A stretch of DNA of 31,779 nt from Thecamonas trahens ATCC 50062 (GCF_000142905.1 NW_013657631.1:257323-289101); one strand, 5' to 3'. Numbered from the stretch's first letter, positions 11,170 through 29,845 are shown. Notes: generated by a model from the sequence alone, not told the origin. Numbers and translations are program-made.

Positions 11170-13506
11170 CTACGGTTGGGCGAGGAGGTAGGTCTTGAGG
11201 GCGGGGAAGATCGGCGAGCCGAGGCCGGTGGCCGCATCCCATCCCTCGGCGGCGGGGTAGCCCCAGGCGGAGCAGCCGATCCAGAGCGATCCGGGCTGCG
11301 AGTCGAGGTTGCACGTCTGGTCGTAGTACATGGCGGTGGTGACCTGGCGGCAGTGGTTGGAGCCCTGAGTGATGTCCGAGAAGGTGCCGATGGGCGCGGC
11401 GTAGAGGTACGGGTTGAGGAAGCCGATGGACGACTTGCCGGCGGCGTACCGCGCGTCGTTGATGAGCGAAATGAGGCCGGCAAACGACGGTGATGACGCT
11501 GACGTGCCGTCGATGCCCGGCATGACCGAGCATGAGCCACTGTCAAACGCGCTGATCTCAAAGTTGTGGCCCATAAAGGCGACGTCCGGCGCCCCGCGTC
11601 CGCCCTGTGCAAAGACTGCAGCCGGCGGCAGCGCCGCCGCGTTCGCCGACAGGTACCCAGCCGCGGCCTTGGCCTGCCAGGTCGGGACCGGGTGGAACTG
11701 CGAGAAGAAGCCGGCCGAGGTGATGGCGGCGCCGGTCTCCGAAGAGCAAGTCACTTCGGTGTTCGGGCCAGTGCACTCGGGCTCGCCCGGGCAGGTGAGC
11801 ATGGTCGCGCCGACCGCGGTCACGTACGGCGACGCGGCCGGGTACTGCGACTGCAGCGAGGCGTCGACTCCGAGGCCGGGGTTGACCGGCTTGCCGTACT
11901 CGTACGCGCCAATGGTGCACGTGATTCCGTTTGCCTGCCATGTCTTGGTCGGGAACTGCGAGGTTGAGCAGTTGGACGAGACCGTCGGCTGGGCGGCGGT
12001 ACAGTCCGGGCCAAAGATTGAGGTCATCTCGAGCGAGCAGCCTGCCTCGGCCACAAAGGTGCCAGAGGTAAACTCGGAGATGGCGGTCGGGCAGACTTCG
12101 AGGACGATCTGGCAGATGAAGCCGCGACCCATGCCGCCGACAGGGATGGCACATGTAAATGACTCGGTCGAGCCCGAGTCCGACGGCGCCGACGCGGTGA
12201 CCGACAGCTGGTTGACGACGCCGTCAGCGTAGCCGGTCTGGTACGGCAGGTTCGACGAGTCGCCGGCAGCGCCGTCGTCGCCGGTCGCAACCATGACAGT
12301 CCACCCGCGGACGCCAAACTTGACAAACTCGGCATCGACGGCGGCAATGTACTTGGCCGAGTCGTAGCCAAACGACGGGCAGTACTGGGTGATGTTCGCC
12401 AGGTCGGCATCGCACTGCCACACCTCGGGCAGGCCGTACGAGAGTGAGAAGACCTGCGGCGTCGACGAGCTGGGTCCGTCCTGTCCAGTCACCTCGTACA
12501 CCCAGTTGAGCATCCACTCTTGCTGGTGCTGCTCGTCAATGTCCGAGTTCCACACCCAGGTCTCGATCCCGGCCCCAATCGACGTCATGTAGTCGACGTC
12601 GAGGTCGGCCTCCAGCTGGCCGGCTGCGCACGTCTCATTGGGTGCAATGCCCCAGCAGTTGTAGCCCTTGGACTGCGCAATCTTGCCGTACGTCGCGTTG
12701 TCAAAGGTCTCGACAAACTGAGCTAGGCACTCGGGGTTGTAGAACGAGCCAAACGAGCCGATGCACTGCTTAGCCATTGTCGCCACCGGTGTGTAGTCGA
12801 TGCCATAGAAGTCGCGCAGCAGCGCAGGCGTCACCTGCGTGTATCGGCCCTTGTACTGCGACTTGCTGCCGCTCGTTGCGACTGTGTCCGCCCCGGTCGT
12901 CGCCTTCTGGCCCGCCCGCTGCGGATGCGAAAAATGGAAGACCTCAGCGAGGCCCGAGACAAGGGCCACGTGCGGCGCAAGCGCCGCAGGCACATGCGCC
13001 GACGATGTGATCGCCAGCTGCGTCGGCGCCGCCTCACCGAGCGCCTTCTTGTCCGCCACCGACATCCAAACGCCCATCTTGGTCCGGAACATCCGCTCGA
13101 CGGTACTCACCGAAGCCGTGATTTTGAGCGTGTCCGAGCGGACCTCGACGGCGACCGGGAACTCGGCGAGCCAGGCCATGACGGCCTCGGCGGCACCGGC
13201 CCGAGCCGCAAACAGCGCCTCGGTGGCCTCAAAGTCGAGATGCTGGCCAGCACGCGGCGAGCCAGGGCTCGACACCGCCAGCAGCTCTGCCTCCAGCTCC
13301 TCCATGGTTTTTTCACGCACTAAATGCACGCGGAACGTGACCCGAGTCTCGCCACCGGCATCGCCTACAAGCACAAAGCCCAGCGGAGCGACCTCCCGCT
13401 TGGCCACCGCCACCCTGTCGCCGTTGTACCCCGTCGTCGTCGTCGCCATGCACATACCCACCAAGCAGATCAGGCCCAGAAGACCAAGCCCAATACCCTT
13501 GTTCAT
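11170..13506 (-). CDS. Peptidase S53 (sedolisin / tripeptidyl-peptidase 1-like) precursor
   Basis: Signal peptide and pro-domain (VSSPGSPRAGQHL, V.AWL); catalytic EADLD (Glu, Asp); oxyanion ATGDDGA; YPAASPYVTAVGAT; GRGAPDVA; GTSASSP (Ser); Ca-site GWDAATGLGSP. Confidence 0.92.
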   Translation of the reverse strand: MNKGIGLGLLGLICLVGMCMATTTTGYNGDRVAVAKREVAPLGFVLVGDAGGETRVTFRVHLVREKTMEELEAELLAVSSPGSPRAGQHLDFEATEALFAARAGAAEAVMAWLAEFPVAVEVRSDTLKITASVSTVERMFRTKMGVWMSVADKKALGEAAPTQLAITSSAHVPAALAPHVALVSGLAEVFHFSHPQRAGQKATTGADTVATSGSKSQYKGRYTQVTPALLRDFYGIDYTPVATMAKQCIGSFGSFYNPECLAQFVETFDNATYGKIAQSKGYNCWGIAPNETCAAGQLEADLDVDYMTSIGAGIETWVWNSDIDEQHQQEWMLNWVYEVTGQDGPSSSTPQVFSLSYGLPEVWQCDADLANITQYCPSFGYDSAKYIAAVDAEFVKFGVRGWTVMVATGDDGAAGDSSNLPYQTGYADGVVNQLSVTASAPSDSGSTESFTCAIPVGGMGRGFICQIVLEVCPTAISEFTSGTFVAEAGCSLEMTSIFGPDCTAAQPTVSSNCSTSQFPTKTWQANGITCTIGAYEYGKPVNPGLGVDASLQSQYPAASPYVTAVGATMLTCPGEPECTGPNTEVTCSSETGAAITSAGFFSQFHPVPTWQAKAAAGYLSANAAALPPAAVFAQGGRGAPDVAFMGHNFEISAFDSGSCSVMPGIDGTSASSPSFAGLISLINDARYAAGKSSIGFLNPYLYAAPIGTFSDITQGSNHCRQVTTAMYYDQTCNLDSQPGSLWIGCSAWGYPAAEGWDAATGLGSPIFPALKTYLLAQP

Positions 13507-14272: not shown

Positions 14273-17200
14273 ATGGCGGCTGTATCGGCGTCGTCATCGA
14301 CGGGGCCTGGACTCGATCCGGAGCATGACCCGAGCCTGTGGCAGGAGCTGACAACCGAGGACGGGCTGGTGTACTACTACAATGCTGGGCTTGACATTAC
14401 CCAAGAGGACAAGCCGGCGTGCTTGCGGACCGATGGCGACGAGGCGTTTGATGGCGCGTGGGCATGGGTGCCTGATGAGCAGGAAGGCTACGTCGCCGGG
14501 CGGGTTATCGAGACCAATGCTAACGACGAGCCGGCGGTCATCGAGCTCATCGACGGCGGTACTCGCCGTGTACCCAAGAAGGACCAGGGCTCGACATTTA
14601 CCCTCTCACCGGGCTCGCTCCGCAAGAACCGTGACGACCTTGTGCAGATGGGCGAGATCGACGAGGGCATCATTCTCCACAACCTCAAGAAGCGGTTCAT
14701 GGAGGATACCATTTACACCAACATCGGGCCGATTCTCATCATCGTCAACCCGTACCGGTGGATGAAGCTCTACACCGAAGAGATCATGGAGAAGGTTCGC
14801 AACCGCGGCATCCAGATGCTCAAGCCGCACATCTTCAACATTGCCGACGACGCTTTCCGGCAGTTGTCGGAGAAGATGGCGTCGGGCGAGAATCCGAATC
14901 AGTCGATCCTCATTTCAGGCGAGTCGGGTGCCGGCAAGACCGAGGCGACCAAGCAGGCGCTCAAGTACCTTGCGCACTGCGCCGGGTCGGGCGAGACCTC
15001 GGGCGTGGAGCAGAAGCTGCTTGCGGCGAACCCGCTGCTGGAGGCGTTTGGCAACGCGGCGACGCTGCGGAACCACAACTCGTCGCGGTTTGGCAAGTGG
15101 ATGGAGGTGTTTTTTGACTCACGGCGGCGGATTGTGGGCGCCAAGATCAACAACTACCTGCTGGAAAAGTCGCGTGTCTCGCACCAGATCGGCGGCGAGC
15201 GCAACTTCCACATTTTCTACCAGCTCTGCCAGGCGCGCGAGATTGCGGAGATGTACTCGCTGGGGCGGGCAGAGGAGTATGCGTTTGTGCGCGGGCGGAC
15301 GGTCATCGACGACGCGCACTTTTCAGATGCCAAGGACTTTGCCGAGGTGCTGGAGGCGATGGACATGTTCAACATCAAGGAGGGTGCGGACCGGCAGTCG
15401 ATTTTCCGGTTGGTGGCGGGTATTCTCCACTTTGGCAACCTTGAGTTTGCTCGCGATGACTCGGGCGAGGGCTCGCGCATTCGCAACCCCGAAACGCTCG
15501 CGGTCGCAGCCAGCATGTTCTGTGTGCCAGAGGCTGCGCTCGAGCGTGCGGTCTTGTTCCGGACGCTGACGTTCAAGCGGCAGGATGACGTCATTGTGCC
15601 GCTTACGCCAGAGCAGGCAGCCGACAACCGCAACGCACTGGCACGAACGCTGTACAACTCGATGTTCAACTGGCTGGTGGTGCGGGTCAACCAGGTGCTT
15701 GCGCCCAAGGGCGGAGTCGGCGGCCTCAACCTCATCGGGATCCTGGACATTTTCGGGTTTGAGATTTTCCAGAACAACTCGTTCGAGCAGCTCTGCATCA
15801 ACTACGCTAACGAGAAGCTGCAGCAGCACTTTAACCAGCACACGTTCAAGATGGAGCAGCAGCTGTACATGGACGAGGGCATCAACTTTGAGGAAGTCAA
15901 GTTTGTGGACAACCAGCCGTGCCTGGACCTGCTCGAGCGTAAGCCGCACGGCATCCTCATCATGCTTGACGAGGAGCTGCTCGCGCCGTCGGGTTCTGAC
16001 GATCGGTTCCTAGACAAGCTCAACTCACGGCACTCGAAGAAGACGGAGCGGTTCTCGATGGCGTTCCGGACGCCCAACACGTTCAACGTGGAGCACTACG
16101 CTGGACAGGTGACGTACGACGTGCGCGGGTTTCTGGAGAAGAACAAGGACACGATTGAGAAGGATCTGCTGACGCTTGTGCACGCGTCGACAGACCAGTT
16201 CATCCAGCACTTGTTTGAGTCTGTGGGCGCCGACTCCAAGTCGCGAAAGCAGAGTACGGCGTTCCAGTTCCGGACGCAGCTCGGGTCGCTGATGAAAGAG
16301 CTTCAGGCGACGACGCCGCATTATGTGCGGTGCATCAAGCCGAACTCGGTGTTCAAGCCGCGGATCTGGAGCGGGCGCGACTCGCTGCTCCAGCTGCGGT
16401 ACTCGGGAGTGTTTGAGGCTGTCCGCATCCGGCAGACCGGGTTCCCGTTCCGGTACAGCCACGCCGAGTTTATCCGGCGGTACGGGGTGTTCAACTCGTG
16501 GGCGCGCAAGTCGAGCGAGGCTGCGACGTGCAAGGACATTCTGGAGAGCGTGCGCGGCGACTTTTCCGAGGTGCAGATCGGACGGACGCGCGTGCTGTAC
16601 CGGGCCAAGATGCACCGTGCGCTCGAGGTGCGACTGTCGATCATTCTGCATCGGATGGCGACCAAGGCGCAGGCCGCGTTCCGTGGATTCCGGGCACGCA
16701 AGCTGTTTGCGCAGATGAAGAAGGTGGACGCGGCGATGCGTGCGGCGATGGCAACGCTGGACGTGGACACGCTCCGTGCAGCGATTTCCGAAGCACGTGC
16801 GATGTGGTTCCAACTCGGGGTGACAGACGAGGCGGAGCGGCTGTGCGCGCGGCTTGAGGAGGAGCGCGGGCTGAACGCGGCGATGGAGCGGCTGCGGACT
16901 GCTGGTGACCCAGAGGGCAACTACGAGGAGATTTTCCGGGTCATCTCGCGGGCCGAGGAGCTTGGGGTGGTCAACCCAGACATTGCGGTTCTGCGCGAGT
17001 CGATCCGGTCGATCCACGAGCGCAAGCAGGCGGTGAAGGACCTGGAAGAGGGCGCACGTGAGTTTGACAAGAAGCGGCTCGAGGCCGGGCTGGAGGCTGT
17101 TTCACGGCTCGGCATCTCGTGCGCCGGCGCGGTAGCGACGGCACAGCGCGTGCTGGACCTCATCCTCTCTGAGGAGTCGCTGGTCTCGCGGTGCTCGGCC

Positions 17201-20200
17201 GCGCTGTACTCTGCTCAGGATGATCTGCAGGGTCTGCAAGAGGCGCTCTCTGAGGTGTCGGCGTTCCAGATCCGGACCGAGGCCGGCAAGCTGCTACGGT
17301 CGAAGCTGTCGGCTACGGTCGGCATCCGTGTGGCGATTCGTGACCAGGACTGGGATGGGCTGCGATCTGCAGTGGATGCGGCGCTCGCACTGGGGCTTGC
17401 CGGTATGCCAGATGTTGTGGCGGCGGAGGAGGGCCTCGCGCTGAGGGCGCGGATGGCAGAGGTGGGATCCGCGCTGGTGGCTGAGGTTCCGCGCAAGGTG
17501 CTCCCGGCGCTCCTTGCGGTGCTGGCGCAAGCGCGCGAGCTGGAGATGGGTAGCTCGCTGTACTCGTCGTGGCGCGACGAGGTGGCGGGCGCAGAGGCGC
17601 AGGCGGCCGCGCATGCGGCGTTGCTGGAGGATTTGCGGACGCAGCTCAAGCCACTGGAACGGACAGTGACGCCGGCGCGGGCGGTGCTGGAGCTCAAGAC
17701 ACAGATTGGCGTTGCAGACGAGTTCGGGCTTGTGGCGCAGGACGACCTGGCGCTTGTTGAGGCGGCGCGGACGCTGCTCGCTGTTCGCGAAGGGGTGTCT
17801 GGGAAGGAGTGGCGGAAGCTGGAGAACGCCGTGGCGTCTGCTGCGCGGCAGCCGAGCATTGCGGACCACCCGGAGGTTGCGGCGGGCAAGGAAGGTCTTG
17901 CGCTGCGGGCCAAGATGCTCGGCGTGGCCGGGCAGCTCTCGACGCAGATGTCGGCGCGTGCGATGCAGGGTCTGGCGCAGGCGCTCGAGGACGCGGAGGC
18001 GCTTGACATGAAGACCTCGTACTGGTCGACGTGGGAGGACGTGGTTGTGGCCGGAGAGGTGCAGCTGGCGCAGCACAAGCGGATTGTCAAGAACCTCAAG
18101 GCTTGCACGGGACCTGGGACTCAGCTGCAGATCGATTCGCTGGAGGCAGCGCTTGCTGACGCGCGCGCGTTTGGCCTGCGGCAGCCTGCAGACACGGCGC
18201 TTGTCTCGCTCGGCACGCTCCTCCTGGAGCTGCGGCGCGCACTGGCGGCGCGCGACTGGGCGGTGTTGGGCCAGTGCGTGGCGCGTGCGGCGTCGTCGGG
18301 AATCTCAGCGCCGGAAGTGGCACAGGTCAAGGCCGGCCTCGAGCTGCGGGAGCAGATGCACGAGGTTGCATCGCGACTGAGCGTGGCCAAGGCGAAGCAC
18401 GACTCTGAGGCGCTGCGCGACGCGATGGGCACAGCAGTGCGGCTGGAGATGGAGGACTCGATGTGGTCGACGTGGAGCGAGCTTGTTGTGGCGTGCGAGA
18501 ACCAGCTCCGGCGGCATCTGGAGCTGCTGCGTGCGCTGCGTGCGACGCTCGCACCCGGCACCTCGAAGCTCATTGACCAGCTGCAGTCTGTGCTCAACAA
18601 TGTGGCGGCGTTTGGGTTCAAGACCCGTGACGACTGCGTGCTCGAGGAGCAGGGCCGGATTACGCTCTCGCTCCGCAAGGCGATTGCGGCGCGGGCATGG
18701 GACGACATTGCCGGCGCGCTGGCGTCTGCCGCAGCGGCCGGCTACACCTCGACCGAGGTCTCTGCCGCCAACTCCGGCCTGGAGCTGCGGGCTAAGATGG
18801 AGGTGGTGGCGACCAAGCTGAGCAAGGCGGCTGCGGCGCATGATGCCAAGGCGATGGCGGCTGGTCTGGGCGAGGCCGACACGCTGGAGATGGCTACGTC
18901 ATACTGGTCGACGTGGTCCGAACTGCTGGAAAGGTGGAGCGGCAGCTGGTTACCCACCGGGCTGTTGTGGCGTCGCTCAAGGAGACGACGGCACCAGGCA
19001 CGTCCAAGCTTGTTGAGCCGCTACAGGACGCGATCGAGGCTGCGACCGAGTACGGGCTGTGGACGGACTTGGACGCAGACTTGCTCCGCGGAGCGGAGAT
19101 CACGCTGCAGGCACGGATTGGGTTTGCGTCGCGCGATTGGGAAGCTGTCCGCAAGGCGACGCAAGCTGCGTTTGTGGCCGGGCACGAGACCTCTGAGCTC
19201 CGCGAGCTTGCCGAGGGACTCAAGCTCCGGGCGAAGATGTCTGGTGTGGCCGAGGCGCTACGCCGTGCGATGGAGGCACACGACGCGGTGGCGCTGGACG
19301 CGGCGCTGCTGGACGCGTCGGGCCTGCGGATGGAGAGTTCAGCGTGGTCGACGTGGCAGGAGCTGATGGAGAAGGCGCGGGCGCAGCGAACGCAGCACGC
19401 GGATTTGCTCAGCGACTTGCGGCACTGGCTATCGGCTGGCAAGGAACGTGCGATCGAGCCGCTGGCCGACGCGCTTGCAGCCGGAGTGCAGTACGGTTTC
19501 TGTGTGGCAGAGGACGTGCAGGTGCTTAACGAGGCCAAGCTCGTTCTCCAAATCCGCAAGGGCTTCGATGCCAAGGACTACACGTCTGTGCGGTCGCAGG
19601 TGCGGCGGGCAACGCAGCTTGGACTCGCCAGCTCGCGCGAAATCGCGGCAGCGGCGCAAGTGCTTGAGGCGCGGTCGCAGATGGAGGCGACTGCTCGCAA
19701 GCTCAAGGCCGCGGCAGCGGCGCACGACGCGCCGGCGTTGAGGGCGGCACTTGTGGAGGCGCGCGGGTGCGAAATGGGTACATCGCCGCACTCGTCATGG
19801 GTCTCGGAGGTGGTGGAGGCCAAAGAGCTGCTGTCGAAGCATCGGTCGCTGCTTGTGCGGCTCCGAGTGGCGGCGGCACCCAAGTCGCGTAACCTGATTG
19901 GGCCGCTTGCGGCGGCGCTGCAAGAGGCGATCGACTTTGGGCTGTGGACACCTGCGGACGCAGGAGTGCAGCAAAACGCATCGATTGTGCTCCGTGCGCG
20001 ACAGGCTCTCGACGCGCAGTCGTGGCAGGGTCTCAAGGCCGCGCTTGACTCTGCGCTAGTGGCGCAGCTGGACAACGAGGAGATCCGGTGGTACCGCGAG
20101 GGCCTTGCGCTGCGGCACAAGATGAGCGCAGTGGCCGAGTCGCTGGAGCGCGCTGTGCGCAGCCGCGACGTCGACGCACTGGTGGCTGGTGTGGAGGAGG

Positions 20201-21597
20201 CGACGACCCGCGAGGTGGACATGATCTCGTCGCCGTGGTCGTCGTGGTCGCCGCTGGTCGACTCTGCAGCGGAGCTGGCGGAGGAGGGCAAGTCGCTGCG
20301 GACGAGGCTGCGGTCGTCGCTGGAGCCGCCGGCCGAGGTGGGTGATGCCAGCGCAGCCGAGGCGGCGCACCTTGCGCTGCTGGATGCTGCCGACGAGTAC
20401 GGGTTTACGCTCGGCGACGACCTCGAGCTTGTGCGGCAGTCGCGGCTGTACCACCAGGTCCGTGTTGCGCTTCGTAGCTCCGACTGGAGCCGGCTCGAAG
20501 CCACGCTCCGGTCTGCGCTCAGCTTTGGAATGGAGAGCCCGGAACTTGCAGCGGCGGCAGAGGCTGTGCATCTTGCACGGCAGCGTGCCGAGATGGCAGC
20601 GCTGCTCAAGTCGGCAATGCAAGACGTGTACAACTACGAGCGCAACGTGCTCGGGATGGCACTGGAGCAGGCGGAGCCGCTGCGGCTGCACGAGTCCGAG
20701 TACGCGCTGCTAGAGCAGGAGGCGAAGAAGCTGGCGGCACAGATCGAGACAGTGCGCGGCTCGCTGGAGAGCGGGACTGCCAATGTGGATGCTGCGGAGC
20801 TGAGCGTTGCGCTGGAGCTCGCGGCCGACATCGGGTACGAGACGGTGCAGGTGGCATCTGCACGTGTGCTCCTCCACGAGATCCAGTCGATTGTGGACGG
20901 AGCGTCTGTGGCGCTTTCGACCCGCGACGTCAAGGTGCTGCAGCAGCTGCTGCGGCGGGCCAAGATGATCAATCTTCGGGCGCCGCCGATTCCGGAGATC
21001 GAGATGAAGCTGCCTTTGTTTGTGTACTCGGAAGGTGACAAGCAGGTGAAGGACTTTGAGCGGCTGCGCGACGCTGAGAGCTTTGCGTCAAAGAAGTGGT
21101 TCGGACGGAGCTCGGCAGCGCAGAGCATGCTCATGTGGTCGGGCTCGCCGCTGCCCAACTCGCTGACGCAGCTCGACTCGGCCGGTGAAGTCAAGATTGC
21201 GTTGCAGGCGTTCACCAATTTGCTGGCGTACATGGGCGACCGCAAGTCCGGTGGGGTGTTCTCGTCCAAGAAGGCCGGCGGTGAGAAGCCGATGCGGTTC
21301 CTCGTCGAGCTCGGACGCGGCAACTCGGGCTCGCCGCTCGCAGATGAGCTCTACGTCCAGCTTGTCAAGCAGCTGAGCGAGAACCCGCATGTAGAGTCGG
21401 AGGCCTTTGGCTGGCGGCTCATGGAGGCGTACGTTCAGACCTTCCTCCCCTCGGCCGCCTTTTTCGTCTACCTCGAGTGGTTCCTCATCAACCAGCCCGT
21501 GGTCGACGGCCGCCCCGGGGCCGCACAGTACGTTGCCTGGCTCCGCGGGACGCGTGCCGAAGGCGCCGCTGGTGCCGCCAGCGCGTCGAGTGCGTGA
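14273..21597 (+). CDS. Giant unconventional myosin A (class IV-like): WW, N-terminal SH3-like, motor, one IQ, 7 x ~147-aa repeats, MyTH4; ~2440 aa after correcting a 1-nt frameshift at 18930-18932
   Basis: WQELTTEDGLVYYYN (WW), GESGAGKTE, LEAFGNA, NSSRFGK, LDIFGFE, FEQLCINYANEKLQ, HYVRCIKPN, AQAAFRGFRARK (IQ), and LAYMGD...DELYVQLVKQL...GWRLM...F.PS (MyTH4). ORFs 13649-19366 and 18913-21597 join into one repeat-consistent protein. Confidence 0.92.
14603..17031 (+). repeat. Copy 1 of a ~2.43-kb near-perfect direct repeat (myosin motor, IQ and proximal tail)
   Basis: Matches 22194-24622 at a constant offset of 7591 nt; I found about a dozen substitutions by eye and no indels. Confidence 0.95.
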
Positions 21598-21851: not shown

Positions 21852-24800
21852 ATGTCTGCGTTGGCAAGTCGGTCCGGAGTGAGCGAGGCCGAAGCAGCCG
21901 AGCTGGCGCGTGACCCGAGCCTGTGGCAGGAGCTGACAACCGAGGACGGGCATGTGTACTACTACCATGCGGTGTTGGACGTAACCGACGAGGACAAACC
22001 GCGGTGTCTCCGCGGCGGCGACGAAGATGGTTATGACGGCGCAGAGTGGGTCTGGGTCCCCGACGAGGTCGATGGCTACAAGGCCGGCAGAGTCCGTGGC
22101 TCGGACCCGGCGACAGGCCTGCCGCTCGAGGTCGACATTCTCGATGGTGAGCTTGTGGTTGTCCGCAAGAAGGACCGTGCTCGGTGCTTGCCACTCTCGC
22201 CGGGCTCGCTCCGCAAGAACCGTGACGACCTTGTGCAGATGGGCGAGATCGACGAGGGCATCATTCTCCACAACCTCAAGAAGCGGTTCATGGAGGATAC
22301 CATTTACACCAACATCGGGCCGATTCTCATCATCGTCAACCCGTACCGGTGGATGAAGCTCTACACCGAAGAGATCATGGAGAAGGTTCGCAACCGCGGC
22401 ATCCAGATGCTCAAGCCGCACATCTTCAACATTGCCGACGACGCTTTCCGGCAGTTGTCGGAGAAGATGGCGTCGGGCGAGAATCCGAATCAGTCGATCC
22501 TCATTTCAGGCGAGTCGGGTGCCGGCAAGACCGAGGCGACCAAGCAGGCGCTCAAGTACCTTGCGCACTGCGCCGGGTCGGGCGAGACTTCGGGTGTGGA
22601 GCAGAAGCTGCTTGCGGCGAACCCGCTGCTGGAGGCGTTTGGCAACGCGGCGACGCTGCGGAACCACAACTCGTCGCGGTTTGGCAAGTGGATGGAGGTG
22701 TTTTTTGACTCGCGGCGGCGGATTGTGGGCGCCAAGATCAACAACTACCTGCTGGAAAAGTCGCGTGTCTCGCACCAGATCGGCGGCGAGCGCAACTTCC
22801 ACATTTTCTACCAGCTCTGCCAGGCGCGCGAGATTGCGGAGATGTACTCGCTGGGGCGGGCAGAGGAGTATGCGTTTGTGCGCGGGCGGACGGTCATCGA
22901 CGACGCGCACTTTTCAGATGCCAAGGACTTTGCCGAGGTGCTGGAGGCGATGGACATGTTCAACATCAAGGAGGGCGCGGACCGGCAGTCGATTTTCCGG
23001 TTGGTGGCGGGTATTCTCCACTTTGGCAACCTTGAGTTTGCTCGCGATGACTCGGGCGAGGGCTCGCGCATCCGCAACCCCGAAACGCTCGCGGTCGCAG
23101 CCAGCATGTTCTGTGTGCCAGAGGCTGCGCTCGAGCGTGCGGTCTTGTTCCGGACGCTGACGTTCAAGCGGCAGGATGACGTCATTGTGCCGCTTACGCC
23201 AGAGCAGGCAGCCGACAACCGCAACGCACTGGCACGAACGCTGTACAACTCGATGTTCAACTGGCTGGTGGTGCGGGTCAACCAGGTGCTTGCGCCCAAG
23301 GGCGGAGTCGGCGGCCTCAACCTCATCGGGATCCTGGACATTTTCGGGTTTGAGATTTTCCAGAACAACTCGTTCGAGCAGCTCTGCATCAACTACGCTA
23401 ACGAGAAGCTGCAGCAGCACTTTAACCAGCACACGTTCAAGATGGAGCAGCAGCTGTACATGGACGAGGGCATCAACTTTGAGGAAGTCAAGTTTGTGGA
23501 CAACCAGCCGTGCCTGGACCTGCTCGAGCGTAAGCCGCACGGCATCCTCATCATGCTTGACGAGGAGCTGCTCGCGCCGTCGGGTTCTGACGATCGGTTC
23601 CTAGACAAGCTCAACTCACGGCACTCGAAGAAGACGGAGCGGTTCTCGATGGCGTTCCGGACGCCCAACACGTTCAACGTGGAGCACTACGCTGGACAGG
23701 TGACGTACGACGTGCGCGGGTTTCTGGAGAAGAACAAGGACACGATCGAGAAGGATCTGCTGACGCTTGTGCACGCGTCGACAGACCAGTTCATCCAGCA
23801 CTTGTTTGAGTCTGTGGGCGCCGATTCCAAGTCGCGAAAGCAGAGTACAGCGTTCCAGTTCCGGACGCAGCTCGGGTCGCTGATGAAGGAGCTCCAGGCG
23901 ACGACGCCGCATTATGTGCGGTGCATCAAGCCGAACTCGGTGTTCAAGCCGCGGATCTGGAGCGGGCGCGACTCGCTGCTCCAGCTGCGGTACTCGGGAG
24001 TGTTTGAGGCTGTCCGCATCCGGCAGACCGGGTTCCCGTTCCGGTACAGCCACGCCGAGTTTATCCGGCGGTACGGGGTGTTCAACTCGTGGGCGCGCAA
24101 GTCGAGCGAGGCTGCGACGTGCAAGGACATTCTGGAGAGCGTGCGCGGCGACTTTTCCGAGGTGCAGATCGGACGGACGCGCGTGCTGTACCGGGCCAAG
24201 ATGCACCGTGCGCTCGAGGTGCGACTGTCGATCATTCTGCATCGGATGGCGACCAAGGCGCAGGCCGCGTTCCGTGGATTCCGGGCACGCAAGCTGTTTG
24301 CGCAGATGAAGAAGGTGGACGCGGCGATGCGTGCGGCGATGGCAACGCTGGACGTGGACACGCTCCGTGCAGCGATTTCCGAAGCACGTGCGATGTGGTT
24401 CCAACTCGGGGTGACAGACGAGGCGGAGCGGCTGTGCGCGCGGCTTGAGGAGGAGCGCGGGCTGAACGCGGCGATGGAGCGGCTGCGGACTGCTGGTGAC
24501 CCAGAGGGCAACTACGAGGAGATTTTCCGGGTCATCTCGCGGGCCGAGGAGCTTGGGGTGGTCAACCCGGACATTGCGGTTCTGCGCGAGTCGATCCGGT
24601 CGATCCACGAGCGCAAGCAGGCAATTGTTCAACTTCGGCGCGGGATCAGCGAGTACTCGCGGGCCGACCTTGAGGCTGGGCTGGCGGCTGTGGCGCGGCT
24701 GGGGCTGAGTGCCCAGGAGCTTGTGGCGGCTGGACATGCAGCGCTGGAGCAGCTGAGGGCGGAAGAGGGTTTTGTGACGCTGGCGCAAGCGGCGCTCTCT

Positions 24801-27800
24801 GCCGGCCAAGCGAATGTAGGTGGAGTGCGGGATGCGCTGGAGGCTGGGCGGCGGATGGTGCTACGTACGAAGGGTGGCAAAGCGCTGATGGCAAAGCTGG
24901 AGGCTGTGCTTGCGGTGCGCGAAGCGCTTGTAGCGCGCGAATGGGAAGCGCTCCGGCGGGCTGTCGAGGCTGCACTGACGATGGGTCTTGGCGAGCTGGG
25001 GGACGTGGTTGCGGCACGCGAGGGGCTTGCGCTGCGTGAGCGAATGTCGGGCGTGGCGCGAGAGTTGAGCGCGGCGCAGGCGTCCAAAGTGCTGCTGACG
25101 CTGGAGGTGGCGCTAGCTCGTGCGCGTGAGCTGGAGATGGGCAGCTCGCTGTACTCGTCGTGGCGCGACGAGGTGGCGGATGCGGAGGCACAGGCAGCAG
25201 AGCATGCGTCGCTGGTCGGCGCGCTTGAGTCTTACACGGCGAGCAGCTCATCTTCTGTGGTAGGCCCACTGGAAGCAACGCTTCGTGCTGGCAAGGCGTT
25301 TGGATTTGTTGCGACGAGTGACGTAGAGCTGATGCAGCGCGGCGAGCTTCTGCTGCAGCTGCGGCGGCATCGCAGTGCACGCGAGTTTGAGGCGCTAGGC
25401 ACCCTCATGGAGACGATCGAAGCGGCCGCAAACAGGGTGCAGCTCTGGAATGTCCACGACGAGGTGGCCGACGTTGTGGCTGGGCTTGAGCTTCGCGCGT
25501 CGATGGCGGCGCACGCCGACACGATTGCGGAGGCTGTTGCTGGACGCGATGCCGACGCGCTGCATGCTGCGCTTGTGGCCGCGGACGATGGCGAGCCGCT
25601 GCTGATGTCGACGTCTTTCTGGTCGTCCTGGGTCGACGAGGTTGCAAGCGGTGCGAGTTTCTTGGAGCAGCTCCGGGCGGTACTGCGGGGCTGGAAGCGG
25701 CGAGCTTGCCTGCGGGCGACATGGCCAAGTTTGAGAGCTCTGTCTCGGACGTAGCGCTGGGCATGGAGGCTGCCGTGAAGTCCGGACGCAAGCTTGGGCT
25801 AGTGCGCGAGGTCGACGTGGCGCTCCTCGAGTTTGTGGAGGAGCTGCTTGCACTGCGTCGTGGATTGTTTGACCGCAAGTGGGCGAGCATGCAGGCGAGC
25901 GTGCGGCGGGCAAGCGAGCTCGGGTTCGGCGAGCATAGTGATGTGAGCTACGTGCGCGACGGGCTGCGGCTGCGGGCCAAGATGAGCGGCGTGGCACAGC
26001 GACTGGAGGCTGCGACGCGGGTGGCCGATGCCGACGTGCTGGTGGACGAGCTCAACATGGCGGCGTCACTCAAGATGAGCTCGTCGTACTGGTCCAGCTG
26101 GCAGGATGTGGTGAGCCGCGGGCAGGAAAAGCTCGCTGCGCACCGCGCAGTGGTGGCAGAGCTCGATGAGGCGCTTAACGTGTGGCACGACGGCGACGTG
26201 GCGGCAGCGACGTCGGCGGTGGCGGCGGGCGAGGCGTTCGGGTTTGGGATGCCGGACGATGTGGCACGGCTGGCGCTGGCACGCGATGTGCTCAAGGTCC
26301 GCCATGCTGTAGCAAGCGGGTCGTGGCAGGAGCTTGAGGGCTTGAGCGGACCGCATGCGGAGCTGGAGCGCGCGCAGCAGATAGTGGCGGATCGTCGTGC
26401 GATGGCTGCGCTCGTGCCTACGCTCGAGCAGGCAGCGGCCGGCCGCAATGCGGCCGACCTTGCGGCAGCAATCCATGCCGGGCGCAAGCTGAAGATGGAC
26501 ACTGCAGAGTATTCCTCGTGGCATGCAGAGATGGCGGCGGCCAAGACTGCGCTAACAACGCACCGTGCTATTCTTGCCAGGCTTCGGAGCGCGAGTGCGG
26601 CGCGTGCGTCACTGCGGTCAGAGGGGCTAGCGGTTGCAGTGGCCGCTGCAGAGGCGCTCGGGTTGCGAAAGGCGAGCGAAGTGGCAGAGCTGGAGCGCGC
26701 ACAGGTAGCGCTGCGGCTCCGTGTGGCCGAGTCGAGTGAGTCGTGGGACGAGCTCGCGAGTGCGTTGGACTCTGCGCTTGTGGTGCAGCTGGAGAACGAG
26801 GAGACGAAGCGTGCGCGTGCCGGGCTTGCGCGGCTGCGGCGGATCGACAAGCTTGCAGAGAAGATGGAAGCGGCGATGATGATGCGGCACACTGGAGTTC
26901 TTGCGCTCTGCCTGACTGTTGCGGCGGAGGAAGACATGGAGTGGAGCAGCTGGTCGCGGTGGCGGGGGCTTGTGGGTGAGGCGCGGGCTGTGCAGGCGCG
27001 GTCGGCGGAGCTGCGTGAGCAGCTGCGAGAGACGCTGGAGGTACCGAGCGGGACGAGCGGGCGGTCTGCGGCGTTTCTGGGCGCGCATGCTCGTGTACTC
27101 GACGAGGCGGCCGACTTTGGGTTTGAGCTCAAGGAGGACGTGGACCTGTTTGCCAGCTCGAAGATTGTGTACCTCGTGCGCGAAGCGTGGGCGAAGCAGG
27201 CGTGGGCAGAGCTTGAGCAGCACCTCAAGACGGCAGCGGCGTGTGGAGTGCAGTCGAGCGAGCTTGTTGTGGCGGTGGAGGCGCTGCACGAGTGGGCGCA
27301 GATGTCCGGGCTGGCGTCGCTGGTAGAGGCCGCGGTTGCAGACCGGGCCAACTACGCGCGCGGGACACTGCGGAGCGTGCTGGAGCAGGCACGAGGAGCC
27401 GGGCTGGAGGAGAGCACCGAGTTTGGTGAGGTGTACGCAGCGGCGGCAAGAGTGCAGGCCGAGGTGGAGGCTGTGGACGAGCTTGTGGCGAGCGGGGCGG
27501 AGGAAGGGTCTGTGGAGAAGCTCAGTTCTGCACTTGCGCGTGCAGAGGCTATCGGGTACGACGGCGGCGGACGGGTGGCGGCGGCACGCAAGCTCCGCGA
27601 CGCACTTGCCGAGGCGTTTAACGAGGCCGAGCTCGGGTGCGCTGAGGGCGACGCCAAGATCCTGCAGGTTGCGGTGCGCAAGCTGAAGGCGCTGGGCGGT
27701 GAGGCCCGGCGGGTCTCTGACTACGAAGCCGAGCTCGCGATGTACCAGTACGAAGCCGGCGAGCTTGCGCTGGATGGGTACGGCGGGCTGCGAACACCGG

Positions 27801-28291
27801 AGGCGTTTGCGTCGACCAAGTGGTTCGGCAAGGCGGCTGCGGCTGCAGGGATGATGGAGTTTTCGGACAAGAGCCTTCCCAACTCGCTCGTGCAGCTCGG
27901 CGAGGCTGGCGAGGTGAAGACGGCTGTGGCGGCGTTTGATAAGCTGCTTGTGGTGTTTGGGCTCCGGCGCGGGTCGCGGAGCGCGGCGCTGGAAGCGCTG
28001 ATGGCGTTGGGGCGGAGCGGGAGTGGGACGCTACTTGCGACAGAGCTTTGGCTGCAGGTCATCAAGCAGATGAGCGGACGAAGCGTGAGCGCGGCGGAGC
28101 GTGTGACCGGGTACGAGGTTCTGAGTGCTTACGCGGGCGCGTTTGCACCGTCGGATGACTTTGCGCCGTTCCTCGACTGGTGGCTGATGACTGCCGGGCG
28201 CGGCGGCGGCGGCGAGGCTGGGGCGCAGGTTTGCGCGTCTGTGCGCCGGGCGTTGCGTGCGCTCCGCGGCGGCGTTGGAGCGTCACGGTAA
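21852..28291 (+). CDS. Giant unconventional myosin B, tandem paralogue: same architecture with 5 x ~147-aa repeats and a divergent MyTH4; ~2146 aa after correcting a 1-nt frameshift at 25687-25690
   Basis: The motor translation is the same as copy A. ORFs 21477-25754 and 25706-28291 join by adding one G (VLRGLEAASLPAGD). The C-terminal SLPNSLVQL...ELWLQVIKQM...FAPS aligns with the MyTH4 of copy A. Confidence 0.92.
22194..24622 (+). repeat. Copy 2 of the ~2.43-kb near-perfect direct repeat
   Basis: Matches 14603-17031. Confidence 0.95.
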
Positions 28292-28298
28292 AGACCGC

Positions 28299-29117
28299 TT
28301 ACGGTGCGCAGCGAGCGATGTGGGCTGTGAGTGCGACAGTGGACATCAGGTGCCCGCCGCAGTGCGGGCAACTCGATGATGGTGGTGGTGGTGGTGGCGG
28401 TGGGTGCCAAGGCGAGGCGCGGACCGGCTTGGGCTTTTTGGCAGGTGGCGATGAGGCAGTAGGGTTGGGCTTGCGCTTGCGCTTGCGCTTCTTCGGGTTG
28501 CGATAGTCGCTGGGCTCGCGGATCTTGACGTAAGGCCCGCCGCACGAGGCCTGATGGCGAGCCCACCAATTGTCGTTGGGTCCAGGGGCGCGATTCATGG
28601 AGCGCTTGACGATGCGGGCGCAGCGGCCCTGGCACTGCCACCAGTGAGTGCGAAAGTGGTTGACCTCGTCGTTGAACGAGTGGTAGACGGTGATGGAGAG
28701 GCCGGTGGCGGCGTTGATGCGGCGCATGTGCTGGCAGAAGATGGGCCCGTGGTCCTCACGATTAGAGACCGATGCGTCGAGGAAGAGATAGGCGTGGATC
28801 ATCTCGTGAAGAAGGGTGGAGAGCAGATCGGCGCGAGAGCGGAACTGCAGCAGCTTCTCCGACAGCTTGATGGTGCAGCCACCGAGCGGGCCTCGCCACT
28901 CGCAGAGGCCTGCGCAGAGAGTCATACGCTTGGACCAGACGACCGAGACGCCCGACTCTGCCAGGCGATCCGAGAAGAAGAGGCGATCAAAGTGGAGAAA
29001 GAGGTCGTGGACGGGCGTGGCCACGTCGAGGGTCCACGATGCGACGCCCGTAGCCGTGGACGAGGCAGGAGGAGACGGAGGAGGGGATGGTGAGTGGGTC
29101 AGATCGATGATGGACAT
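28299..29117 (-). CDS. SPRTN: SprT-family DNA-protein crosslink metalloprotease Spartan, compact (272 aa), with C-terminal UBZ-type zinc finger
   Basis: LF..FD.LFF, WSKRMTLCAGLC, IKLSEKLL..R, TLLHEMIHAYLF (HExxH), HGPIFC.HM.RIN, ITVYHSFNDEV, HWWQCQG.C, NRAPGPND.WW..H...CGG.YVKIREP; basic NLS PKKRKRKRK; CPHC...H...C at the C-terminus. An upstream exon in the gap cannot be excluded. Confidence 0.92.
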   Translation of the reverse strand: MSIIDLTHSPSPPPSPPASSTATGVASWTLDVATPVHDLFLHFDRLFFSDRLAESGVSVVWSKRMTLCAGLCEWRGPLGGCTIKLSEKLLQFRSRADLLSTLLHEMIHAYLFLDASVSNREDHGPIFCQHMRRINAATGLSITVYHSFNDEVNHFRTHWWQCQGRCARIVKRSMNRAPGPNDNWWARHQASCGGPYVKIREPSDYRNPKKRKRKRKPNPTASSPPAKKPKPVRASPWHPPPPPPPPSSSCPHCGGHLMSTVALTAHIARCAP

Positions 29118-29159
29118 GGTGTGGGTGGAGGGGGTAGAGGCATGGGTGTGGTGGGGGGG

Positions 29160-29553
29160 NNNNNNNNNNNNNNNNNNNNNNNNNNNNNNNNNNNNNNNNN
29201 NNNNNNNNNNNNNNNNNNNNNNNNNNNNNNNNNNNNNNNNNNNNNNNNNNNNNNNNNNNNNNNNNNNNNNNNNNNNNNNNNNNNNNNNNNNNNNNNNNNN
29301 NNNNNNNNNNNNNNNNNNNNNNNNNNNNNNNNNNNNNNNNNNNNNNNNNNNNNNNNNNNNNNNNNNNNNNNNNNNNNNNNNNNNNNNNNNNNNNNNNNNN
29401 NNNNNNNNNNNNNNNNNNNNNNNNNNNNNNNNNNNNNNNNNNNNNNNNNNNNNNNNNNNNNNNNNNNNNNNNNNNNNNNNNNNNNNNNNNNNNNNNNNNN
29501 NNNNNNNNNNNNNNNNNNNNNNNNNNNNNNNNNNNNNNNNNNNNNNNNNNNNN
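29160..29553. other. Assembly gap (394 N) flanked by G homopolymers
   Basis: Run of n with ggggggg on both sides. Confidence 0.99.
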
Positions 29554-29631
29554 GGGGGGGGGGGTACCGGAGTGAGGTGGGAGAGTGGGGTGGCGGGGGT
29601 GGTGAGGTATGGATGATGGGTGTGTTGGTTG

Positions 29632-29785
29632 GTGGCTGTGGCTGTGGCTGTGGCTGTGGCTGTGGCTGTGGCTGTGGCTGTGGCTGTGGCTGTGGCTGTG
29701 GTGGTCGGCTCGTCGGTCGGTTCGTCGGTTCGTCGGTTCGTCGGTTCGTCGGTCGGTGGGTGGTGGCTGGTTGGCTGGTTGGCTG
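29632..29785. repeat. Compound microsatellite: (GTGGCT) x ~11, then (TCGGTTCG)n-like and (GGTTGGCT)n-like units
   Basis: Directly visible tandem units upstream of the kinase ATG. Confidence 0.9.
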
Positions 29786-29845
29786 GCGGCAGGGCGAGGG
29801 CGAGGGCGGAGGACACGTTTCTTCTGCTTGGCGTGCAGGAGAGAG

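What the first reader, a model, noticed from the sequence alone, without database searches (positions are those of the whole stretch)
17300..20700. Unrecognised ~147-aa tandem repeat with a hierarchical 3 x ~49-aa structure in the myosin tail
Seen: seven units in copy A marked by GLxLRxxM...[DE]MxxSxWS[ST]W...H...[FY]G[LF]...D...R......W (EMGSSLYSSW, DMKTSYWSTW, EMEDSMWSTW, EMATSYWSTW, RMESSAWSTW, EMGTSPHSSW, DMISSPWSSW), plus a degenerate eighth. Copy B (~24900-27440) has five units plus a degenerate one. Each unit seems to hold three Ala/Leu-rich helix-turn-helix subunits of the form DxxxLxxAxxxAxxxG[LMF], and simpler versions flank the array. It is not a heptad coiled coil and does not resemble spectrin, ankyrin or TPR consensus to my eye. 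Inference: a new helical rod or solenoid that may extend the single-IQ lever arm or act as a spring; the Ser/Trp motif may be a repeated binding or phosphorylation site.
Basis: partly seen in the sequence, partly recalled or inferred. Interest (0 to 1): 0.8.

Follow-up and report, generated by a model that had tools for sequence, protein, structure and literature searches.

The report
Helical-hairpin repeat rod in class-IV myosin tails
The tails of two neighbouring Thecamonas trahens myosin genes really are built from a ~147-residue all-helical unit repeated 5 to 7 times, and the same unannotated module fills the tails of related (class IV, MyTH4-bearing) myosins of many other protists, so it is a conserved but undescribed tail-building block rather than a one-off oddity.

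Summary
The window is Thecamonas trahens. It holds two tandem class-IV-type myosin genes: weak WW, SH3-like, motor, one IQ, repeat tail, MyTH4. Copy A has seven ~147-aa units (17432-20559) and copy B has five (25023-27268), each array flanked by degenerate units. Units outside the training set score E 1e-24 to 1e-46. AlphaFold2 (pLDDT 90-94) gives six helices per unit, as three long-short hairpins. This supports the 3 x ~49 reading; profile comparison of the thirds supports it only weakly.

No Pfam family reaches threshold and nothing in PDB matches by sequence. Structure searches return only generic TPR-like or three-helix matches (Z <= 8.5, TM <= 0.41).

The repeat is not unique. A profile search of 1.8 billion proteins found 107 hits. 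Nearly all hits with visible context are myosins with motor, module array and MyTH4, up to 5,663 aa. They include Rhodelphis and three more Thecamonas paralogues. Elsewhere the usual period is ~105 aa (two hairpins). The Ser/Trp loop is confined to four long Thecamonas paralogues.

The proximal tail shows a borderline similarity to Pfam PLU-1. Function (most likely a stacked-helix rod or spacer) is inferred, not shown. Each gene has one frame switch at a homopolymer, probably a sequencing error.

The parts
14273..21597 (+). Myosin copy A. Domain order: weak WW, SH3-like N-terminal domain, motor, one IQ, repeat tail, MyTH4. It equals the database protein P0001 (2432 aa, Thecamonas trahens), apart from how the frame switch is bridged.
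   Evidence: Pfam; 100% match to P0001; coordinates
16658..16708 (+). Single IQ motif at the start of the tail of copy A
   Evidence: Pfam IQ, E 0.013, below the cut-off
16703..17422 (+). Proximal degenerate copies of the unit (16703-17038 and 17198-17422). This region carries the weak PLU-1 similarity.
   Evidence: hmmsearch E 5.6e-6 and 1.5e-8; PF08429 E 0.9 in copy A and 0.046 in copy B
17432..17893 (+). Unit A1 (154 aa)
17894..18334 (+). Unit A2 (147 aa)
18335..18775 (+). Unit A3 (147 aa)
18776..19215 (+). Unit A4, split by a 1-nt frame switch at about 18929-18933, at an AAA run. Homology continues in the new frame.
   Evidence: the spacing is 440 nt where 441 is expected
19216..19659 (+). 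Unit A5 (148 aa)
   Evidence: modelled
19660..20100 (+). Unit A6 (147 aa)
   Evidence: modelled
20101..20559 (+). Unit A7 (153 aa)
   Evidence: modelled
20584..20988 (+). Degenerate eighth unit. It groups with the last unit of the canonical class-IV paralogue on contig C37.
   Evidence: hmmsearch E 7.7e-5; tree support 97/90
21325..21492 (+). MyTH4 domain of copy A (partial match, profile positions 10-65 of 105)
   Evidence: Pfam E 4.1e-13
21852..28291 (+). Myosin copy B, same architecture as copy A. Its DNA is 99-100% identical to copy A from the motor to the proximal tail (copy-A coordinates 14600-17030).
   Evidence: Pfam; identity profile
24294..24995 (+). Proximal degenerate units of copy B
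25023..27268 (+). Five units of copy B, starting at 25023, 25482, 25961, 26390 and 26825. The second is split by a frame switch at about 25689-25693, at a G run.
27296..27559 (+). Degenerate last unit of copy B
   Evidence: hmmsearch E 1.6e-3
28034..28204 (+). MyTH4 domain of copy B (weaker match than in copy A)
   Evidence: Pfam E 4.1e-5, 24.3 bits against a cut-off of 27

Best explanation
The stretch encodes a tandem array of ~147-residue all-alpha units. Each unit is three long-short helical hairpins, six helices in all. The long helices bridge neighbouring sub-bundles, so the units stack into one continuous elongated helical rod or solenoid. The array fills the tail between the single IQ and the C-terminal MyTH4 domain of two tandem class-IV-type myosins of Thecamonas trahens.

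It is a lineage-specific three-hairpin, amplified version of a conserved helical-hairpin module. That module builds the tails of MyTH4-bearing class-IV-like myosins across eukaryotes. The canonical ~1,600-aa members have two or three units. The Thecamonas paralogues have 5-10. Giant environmental myosins have long arrays of ~105-aa two-hairpin units.

Shown here: the repeat, its predicted helical hairpin anatomy, its conservation, and its near-exclusive association with motor + MyTH4. Inferred: it acts as a structured spacer or rod whose unit number sets the distance between the motor and the MyTH4 cargo- or microtubule-binding end. The Ser/Trp loop would then be an ordered structural cap or a lineage-specific docking site.

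The confidence below is for the identity and anatomy. For the spacer function I give about 0.45.
For: Organism and gene:
- 100% match to the Thecamonas trahens protein P0001.
- Architecture by Pfam: motor 4e-219, Myosin_N, weak WW, IQ, MyTH4.
- The motor is 53.5% identical to the canonical Thecamonas class-IV myosin on contig C37. That protein has WW, motor, MyTH4 and two SH3 domains. This architecture is how PMC3942036 defines class IV.

Repeat:
-. Units outside the training set score E 1e-15 to 1e-46.

Structure:
- Three units give pLDDT 90.2 and pTM 0.60. Two units give pLDDT 93.9 and pTM 0.78. Both show six helices per unit in a long-short pattern, with the S/W motif in an ordered 11-residue loop.
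- VIA-align splits each unit into a three-helix part (residues 1-67) and a TPR-like four-to-five-helix part (67-163) that runs into the next unit.

Conservation:
- 107 hits among 1.84 billion proteins.
- 35 of the 41 hits of at least 1000 aa carry a myosin motor and/or MyTH4, counting P0036, whose MyTH4 only Pfam detected.
- Pfam finds only Myosin_head and MyTH4 around the arrays.
- Named sources are Thecamonas and Rhodelphis marinus.
- Module spacing is 100-115 aa outside Thecamonas and 145-150 aa inside it.
- hhalign of the 105-aa unit against the 147-aa unit gives probability 95.9% and E 5e-9.

Own genome:
- Five ORFs carry the unit.
- Unit positions are orthologous between copies A and B and to the canonical paralogue.
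Against: - No coordinates were available, so rise per unit, straightness and rigidity were not measured.
- The AlphaFold2 alignments were shallow (8-10 paralogous rows).
- All structure-search matches are in the noise range for helical repeats, so 'rod' versus 'curved solenoid that binds ligands' is open.
- Nothing is known experimentally about class-IV tails.
- Both genes carry a frame switch, so they could be recent pseudogenes.
- A few hits of the big search are false: P0035 matched through the WSxW motif of TSP1 repeats, and P0015 is low-complexity.
Confidence: 0.85

Rival explanations
1. The array is a TPR-like interaction scaffold. The stacked hairpins form a curved solenoid whose groove, or whose regularly spaced Ser/Trp loops, bind many copies of a partner or a polymer such as cargo adaptors, microtubules or membrane proteins. 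It would not be a passive spacer.
For: - Residues 67-163 of each unit superpose on TPR-like modules (LpoA, Sec72, PgaA, DUF309) at rmsd 2.8-3.6 over 84-98 residues, Z 6.4-7.2.
- The nearest ESM Atlas shapes are TPR proteins, TM 0.31-0.41.
- The S/W loop is almost invariant in the internal units of four paralogues, which is typical of a functional site.
Against: - The Z values are within the noise for helical repeats, by the tool's own calibration.
- No TPR Pfam model hits the tail.
- The S/W loop is missing in the canonical class-IV paralogue and in all non-apusomonad relatives, so it cannot be the conserved function of the module.
Confidence: 0.25
2. The rod is a dimerisation or oligomerisation element, pairing side by side as spectrin or alpha-actinin rods do. 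This would make these myosins two-headed.
For: - There is no coiled coil in the tail, so if these myosins dimerise the repeat is the only candidate. This is an inference.
- The period of ~105 aa in relatives is close to that of the spectrin repeat.
Against: No positive evidence. Pfam finds no spectrin match. The unit has six short helices, not three long ones. The single homodimer prediction gave no verdict and counts neither way.
Confidence: 0.12
3. The repeat is a diverged member of the Pfam PLU-1 family (PF08429), the helical region of KDM5/JARID1 demethylases. On this reading it is not a new family.
For: - PF08429 hits the proximal tail of copy B at E 0.046 and of copy A at E 0.9.
- It hits the canonical Thecamonas class-IV paralogue at 27.3 bits and E 2.5e-6, against a cut-off of 28.5. 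With neighbouring pieces the score is 29.5 bits.
- A precomputed annotation of that protein lists PF08429.
- 4 of 54 environmental relatives hit it, best E 6.4e-5.
- The ESM features search places a PLU-1 cluster at rank 20, score 0.76.
Against: - Hits touch only the proximal simple copies, never the 147-aa units.
- All hits are at or under the cut-off.
- The same model also touches a dynein heavy chain at E 0.012, so it may simply attract helical sequence.
- The profile search from the repeat side returned myosins, and no JmjC, ARID or PHD family appeared among its members.
- The second Atlas search gave no PLU-1.
- The structure searches found no KDM5.
Confidence: 0.3
4. The two genes are decaying pseudogenes, and the repeat no longer has any function in this locus.
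For: Each copy has one frame switch inside the array. The public gene model bridges the switch in copy A with an artificial mini-intron and loses the S/W motif of unit 4.
Against: - Both switches are single-base length changes at homopolymer runs (AAA; G run).
- Homology continues without loss in the new frame, with no stop codons or other damage in about 7 kb per gene.
- Units remain conserved.
- The paralogues on C1 and C10 are uninterrupted ORFs of 2564 and 2198 aa.
- The likely cause is sequencing or assembly error.
Confidence: 0.1

Closest known systems
Class IV myosins (Acanthamoeba HMWMI type; WW + motor + MyTH4 +/- SH3, as defined in PMC3942036)
   Same: - Weak N-terminal WW, SH3-like domain, motor, one IQ and C-terminal MyTH4.
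- The motor is 53.5% identical to the canonical Thecamonas class-IV paralogue.
- That paralogue holds two or three copies of the same unit between motor and MyTH4.
   Different: - The tail is expanded to 8-10 units.
- There is no SH3 after MyTH4.
- The WW match is below the Pfam cut-off.
- The repeat itself is not mentioned in the two classification papers I read: PMC3942036 lists only WW, MyTH4 and SH3 for the class, and a word search of PMC5583752 for 'repeat' gave no occurrence.
TPR-like and other alpha-alpha hairpin solenoids
   Same: Antiparallel helix hairpins repeated in tandem. Part of each unit superposes on TPR-like modules at rmsd ~3 Å.
   Different: - The helices alternate long (21-29 residues) and short (13), and the higher-order period is 147 or 105 aa rather than 34.
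- No TPR Pfam model matches.
- Whole-model TM is at most 0.41 and Z at most 8.5.
Spectrin repeat rods
   Same: An all-helical tandem repeat that forms a tail or rod. Relatives have a ~105-aa period, and the long helices appear to bridge adjacent bundles.
   Different: Four or six short helices per unit instead of three ~30-residue helices. No Pfam spectrin hit. The spectrin structure 3f57 aligns only at Z 6.2 and rmsd 8 Å.
Pfam PLU-1 (PF08429), helical region of KDM5/JARID1 demethylases
   Same: Borderline HMM similarity to the proximal tail copies of class-IV myosins.
   Different: It is never significant on the 147-aa units. It is not a repeat family. It comes from unrelated proteins (nuclear demethylases). 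The reciprocal search does not find them.

Membership tests
Class IV myosin | Myosin motor domain that groups with class IV | tested here: inconclusive
   The motor is 53.5% identical to the canonical Thecamonas WW-motor-MyTH4-SH3 myosin. It is 41-57% identical to other repeat-tail MyTH4 myosins. No class-wide phylogeny was run.
Class IV myosin | WW domain N- or C-terminal to the motor | tested here: inconclusive
   PF00397 scores E 0.013 (copy A) and 0.0054 (copy B), 16-17 bits against a cut-off of 26.9. The paralogues on C37 and C10 have clear WW domains.
Class IV myosin | MyTH4 domain in the tail, without FERM | tested here: met
   PF00784 scores E 4.1e-13 in copy A and 4.1e-5 in copy B, which is just under the cut-off. 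There is no FERM hit.
Class IV myosin | SH3 after MyTH4 (present only in some members) | tested here: not met
   There is no SH3 hit, and the ORFs end 35-30 residues after the MyTH4 match. The feature is optional in the class (PMC3942036).
Pfam PLU-1 (PF08429) | Score at or above the Pfam gathering threshold (28.5 bits) | tested here: not met
   Window tails score 13.3 and 9.1 bits, on the proximal copies only, and nothing on the 147-aa units. The paralogue on C37 scores 27.3 bits, or 29.5 when summed.
Pfam PLU-1 (PF08429) | Profile-profile or structural homology to the KDM5 PLU-1 region | not testable with these tools
   No PLU-1 alignment or solved structure was available by reference.
TPR repeats | 34-residue helix-turn-helix units matching TPR profiles | tested here: not met
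   No TPR model hits at E up to 10. The hairpins are ~42-56 residues with unequal helices. Structural Z is at most 8.1.
Spectrin repeat | ~106-residue three-helix bundle matching PF00435 | tested here: not met
   No Pfam hit. Six helices per 147 aa. 3f57 aligns at Z 6.2 and rmsd 8.0 Å.
Coiled coil or single alpha-helix (SAH) lever extension | A long uninterrupted helix with heptad or E/K/R-rich pattern | tested here: not met
   The longest predicted helix is 29 residues and there are loops every 13-29 residues. Composition is Ala 19%, Leu 13%, Lys 3.7%. No dedicated coiled-coil predictor was run.

The most novel reading that the evidence does not exclude
The module defines a previously unnamed domain family, a 'class-IV myosin tail hairpin repeat'. 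It forms a rigid rod whose length evolution tunes by adding one-, two- or three-hairpin units. Tails range from about 3 units to several thousand residues of array. Unit number would then set the reach of the motor or its working stroke. This would be a natural ruler series usable to test how tail or lever length governs myosin mechanics.
Probability: 0.3. Interest if true: 0.65.

Novelty: new variant of a known kind. Interest (0 to 1): 0.5.

Why it matters
Class IV is one of the few myosin classes argued to go back to the last eukaryotic common ancestor. Its tail between motor and MyTH4 has been treated as featureless.

This work shows that the stretch is a conserved, scalable helical-hairpin repeat. 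It has 2-3 units in canonical members, 5-10 in the Thecamonas paralogues, and long arrays in environmental myosins of up to 5,663 aa. That gives the class a defining tail module and a better marker for annotation; these proteins are currently auto-named 'myosin XI-2' or 'myosin VIIA'.

It also offers a natural series of tail lengths within one genome (roughly 3, 6, 8, 9 and 10 units) for testing whether the rod acts as spacer, lever or scaffold.

It is not a new kind of protein architecture, since alpha-hairpin repeat rods are common. The value is moderate and mainly for myosin and protist cell biology.

Tried and rejected
- Word-index protein search with the tail of copy A found only the protein itself. 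With the tail of the canonical paralogue it found itself and one 78%-identical metagenomic relative. Low-complexity words saturated the candidate list.
- PDB sequence search with the unit profile found nothing below E 1.
- Foldseek against PDB, with the 3-unit and 2-unit models, found nothing below E 0.02 and 0.1, with TM at most 0.3.
- VIA-align over the wide PDB set gave a best Z of 8.5 and 8.1, on mini three-helix bundles and TPR-like pieces. This is within the stated noise for helical repeats.
- The ESM Atlas shape search gave a best TM of 0.41, to TPR-like bacterial proteins.
- The ESM Atlas feature searches returned unnamed eukaryotic clusters at 0.90, a PLU-1 cluster at 0.76, and for the proximal tail only an IQ cluster at 0.76.
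- Tandem Repeats Finder found no DNA-level 441-nt repeat.
- blastp self-comparison within one tail piece returned no off-diagonal HSPs because of culling. It was replaced by piece-against-piece and HMM searches.
- The homodimer prediction of two units gave 'no answer', score 0.00. This is no evidence for or against dimerisation.
- Taxon names for most environmental hits could not be obtained.
- I did not search or fold a protein joined across the frame switches. The pieces on either side were handled separately.
- I could not inspect model coordinates, so no rod length or curvature is given.
Full report
**Where the window comes from and what the genes are**

The tail of the first long ORF matches a 2432-aa protein of Thecamonas trahens ATCC 50062 at 100% identity. 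That protein is auto-named 'myosin XI-2'.

The window holds two head-to-tail genes on the + strand, copy A (14273-21597) and copy B (21852-28291). Pfam gives both the same order:
- a weak WW (E 0.005-0.013, under the cut-off);
- the SH3-like Myosin_N;
- a motor (E about 1e-219);
- one IQ;
- about 1,300 residues without any family;
- a C-terminal MyTH4 (E 4e-13 in A and 4e-5 in B).

WW + motor + MyTH4 (+/- SH3) is how Sebe-Pedros et al. define class IV, and they list T. trahens among its carriers (PMC3942036). The motor is 53.5% identical to a canonical class-IV myosin elsewhere in this genome, on contig C37. That protein has clear WW, motor, MyTH4 and two SH3 domains. I did not run a class-wide phylogeny, so 'class IV' rests on architecture and on this similarity.

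The two copies are 99-100% identical in DNA from about 14600 to 17030 and diverge on both sides.

The GLxLRxxM and [FY]G[LF] landmarks recur in register.

An HMM built from six copy-A units recovers seven units in A (17432-20559). It also finds a degenerate eighth (20584-20988) and two degenerate proximal copies (16703-17422). In copy B, which was not used for training, it finds five units (25023-27268) at E 1e-15 to 1e-38, plus degenerate flanks.

Units are 25-37% identical to one another. No 441-nt repeat is visible in DNA. The array is therefore old and held by selection on the protein, not a recent amplification.

**Frame switches**

Each gene changes frame once inside the array. In both places the homology runs on without interruption in the new frame. 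The change is a single base at a homopolymer: an AAA run near 18930 and a G run near 25690.

The spacing of the motifs across the copy-A switch is 440 nt where 441 is expected. I read these as sequencing or assembly errors. A very recent pseudogenisation cannot be excluded.

The public gene model bridges the copy-A switch with an artificial mini-intron and so loses the Ser/Trp motif of unit 4. I handled the pieces on either side separately.

**Anatomy of a unit**

AlphaFold2 was run on three units (pLDDT 90.2, pTM 0.60) and on two units (pLDDT 93.9, pTM 0.78). Both give six helices per unit in a strict long-short alternation:

| Helix pair | Lengths (residues) |
|---|---|
| First (Ha, Hb) | ~29 and 13 |
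| Second (Hc, Hd) | 25 and 13-14 |
| Third (He, Hf) | 21 and 13 |

That is three hairpins of about 42-56 residues. The Ser/Trp motif is an 11-residue loop between the first short helix and the second long one, and it is modelled with high confidence. The alignments behind these models are shallow (8-10 paralogous rows), but the result is consistent between the two jobs.

At sequence level the support is weaker:

| Comparison of thirds | hhalign score | Highest shuffle score |
|---|---|---|
| s1-s2 (aligned end to end over 49 columns) | 19.7 | 9.4 |
| s1-s3 | 18.1 | 12.5 |
| s2-s3 | 12.6 | 13.6 (not above chance) |

**Comparison with known families**

- No Pfam family reaches its threshold on the repeat, even when weak matches up to E 10 are listed.
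- The unit profile finds nothing in PDB sequences.
- Foldseek finds nothing below E 0.02.
- The ESM Atlas shape search peaks at TM 0.41, on bacterial TPR-like proteins.
- VIA-align peaks at Z 8.5 and 8.1.

The VIA-align local matches split each unit in two. Residues 1-67 resemble a three-helix bundle. Residues 67-163, running into the first helix of the next unit, resemble TPR-like four-to-five-helix modules at rmsd ~3 Å. By the tool's own calibration such Z values are ordinary for helical repeats. I therefore take them as a description of shape, not as homology: stacked hairpins with long helices bridging adjacent sub-bundles.

Spectrin, a long coiled coil and a single alpha-helix are all excluded by the helix lengths. 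For spectrin, the lack of any Pfam hit agrees.

**The repeat is not unique to this gene**

A profile of ten units was searched against 1.84 billion representative proteins. It gave 107 hits at E <= 1e-3.

Local phmmer searches with the window's own motor and MyTH4 show that 34 of the 41 hits of at least 1000 aa carry a motor and/or MyTH4. Pfam adds one more, P0036. Pfam on the best hits shows Myosin_head, then a long unannotated array, then MyTH4. Hit lengths run from about 1,500 to 5,663 aa.

Named sources are Thecamonas itself and Rhodelphis marinus. The rest are MMETSP or EukProt transcripts and metagenome assemblies. Two hits are evident false positives: a TSP1-repeat protein caught through its WSxW motif, and a low-complexity protein.

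Outside Thecamonas most hits match only profile positions ~76-140. After three rounds of profile refinement the module recurs at 100-115 aa, against 145-150 aa in Thecamonas.

An alignment of 207 such ~105-aa units matches the 147-aa unit at hhalign probability 95.9% (E 5e-9, 84 columns). A second, weaker alignment is shifted by one hairpin. So the common currency is the hairpin. Most lineages repeat it in pairs, and the Thecamonas type repeats it in threes.

Short canonical class-IV proteins match the full 147-aa profile two or three times. These are the C37 paralogue, its 78%-identical metagenomic relative P0023, then P0029 and Rhodelphis P0054. The three-hairpin unit therefore predates the Thecamonas expansion.

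**Within the genome**

Five ORFs carry the unit:
- the two in the window;
- one on contig C1 (2564-aa ORF, eight full units plus a partial one, at a strict 147-aa period);
- one on C10 (2198-aa ORF, five to six units, two C-terminal WW domains, no MyTH4);
- the canonical one on C37 (three units).

A tree of 28 units pairs A1 with B1, A6 with B4 and A7 with B5. It also pairs the degenerate A8 with the last unit of C37. The array therefore existed before the A/B duplication, and the 7-versus-5 difference arose by gain or loss of internal units.

The M..S.WS[ST]W loop is nearly invariant in the internal units of the four long paralogues. It is absent from C37, from terminal units and from every non-apusomonad relative. 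It is a lineage-specific elaboration, not the conserved function of the module.

**The PLU-1 lead**

Pfam PLU-1 (PF08429, the helical region of KDM5 demethylases) touches these proteins in several places:
- the proximal, simpler copies in copy B at E 0.046 and in copy A at E 0.9;
- the same region of the C37 paralogue at 27.3 bits, against a cut-off of 28.5, or 29.5 bits when neighbouring pieces are summed;
- a precomputed annotation of that protein, which lists PF08429;
- four of 54 environmental relatives, best E 6.4e-5.

Against this:
- the model never touches the 147-aa units;
- it also brushes a dynein heavy chain at E 0.012;
- the reverse search returned no demethylase-type proteins;
- neither Atlas search supported it beyond a score of 0.76.

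I rate true homology at about 0.3. A profile-profile test, which I could not run, would settle it.

**How it most likely works**

Shown: a conserved, ordered, all-helical hairpin array sits between neck and MyTH4, and its copy number varies widely among paralogues and lineages.

Inferred: the hairpins stack into a continuous rod that acts as a structured spacer. It would set the distance between the motor and the MyTH4 end. MyTH4 domains of other myosins bind microtubules or adaptors; this last point is established knowledge, not tested here. I give the spacer reading about 0.45.

The lever-arm idea is not excluded, but it would need a rigid junction with the IQ helix, which I could not assess. 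One homodimer prediction gave no verdict and counts neither way.

**Novelty and verdict**

Neither myosin classification paper mentions a repeat in class-IV tails. A text search linking PLU-1 to myosins found nothing.

The finding is real and undescribed, but it is a new family within a common architectural kind (alpha-hairpin repeat rods) in a known myosin class. It is shared with many relatives rather than unique.

Interest is about 0.5. It is useful for defining and annotating class IV and as a natural tail-length series, but it is not categorically new.

Noticed in passing
window 18929-18933 and 25689-25693: Both myosin genes switch frame once, at a homopolymer run, with homology continuing in the new frame. 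The public gene model P0001 bridges the first switch with an artificial mini-intron and drops about 20 residues of unit 4, including its Ser/Trp motif.
   Followed up: partly
window 14600-17030 against 22191-24621: The two copies are 99-100% identical in DNA across the motor, the IQ and the first part of the tail. They are only 30-60% identical on either side, with a second short patch of 81% identity near 17500-17600. This pattern fits a gene-conversion tract with sharp edges.
   Followed up: partly
L016:3359-9952 (- strand; G000 contig C10): This paralogue has motor, IQ and five to six units, but two WW domains at the C-terminus (E 1.5e-15) and no MyTH4. The repeat rod is therefore combined with different end domains within one genome.
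   Followed up: partly
L015:2191-7182 (- strand; G000 contig C37): This is the canonical class-IV myosin (WW, motor, three units, MyTH4, two SH3 domains). It is auto-named 'myosin VIIA' in public databases. Its proximal tail nearly reaches the Pfam PLU-1 threshold (27.3 against 28.5 bits).
   Followed up: yes
P0035 (hit of the big search): A VWA + thrombospondin type-1 repeat protein was pulled in through its WSxW motifs, which resemble the WS[ST]W of the Thecamonas loop. This is a false positive. It shows that the motif alone can attract TSP1 repeats.
   Followed up: partly
window 28299-29816 (- strand): The ORF downstream of copy B runs through a long stretch of N (a gap in the assembly) and simple repeats. 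GC falls to 0.40 in 29001-30000 because of this.
   Followed up: no
window 11170-13506 (- strand): A 778-aa ORF upstream of copy A begins with a hydrophobic, signal-peptide-like N-terminus. It is not related to the finding and I ran no search on it.
   Followed up: no
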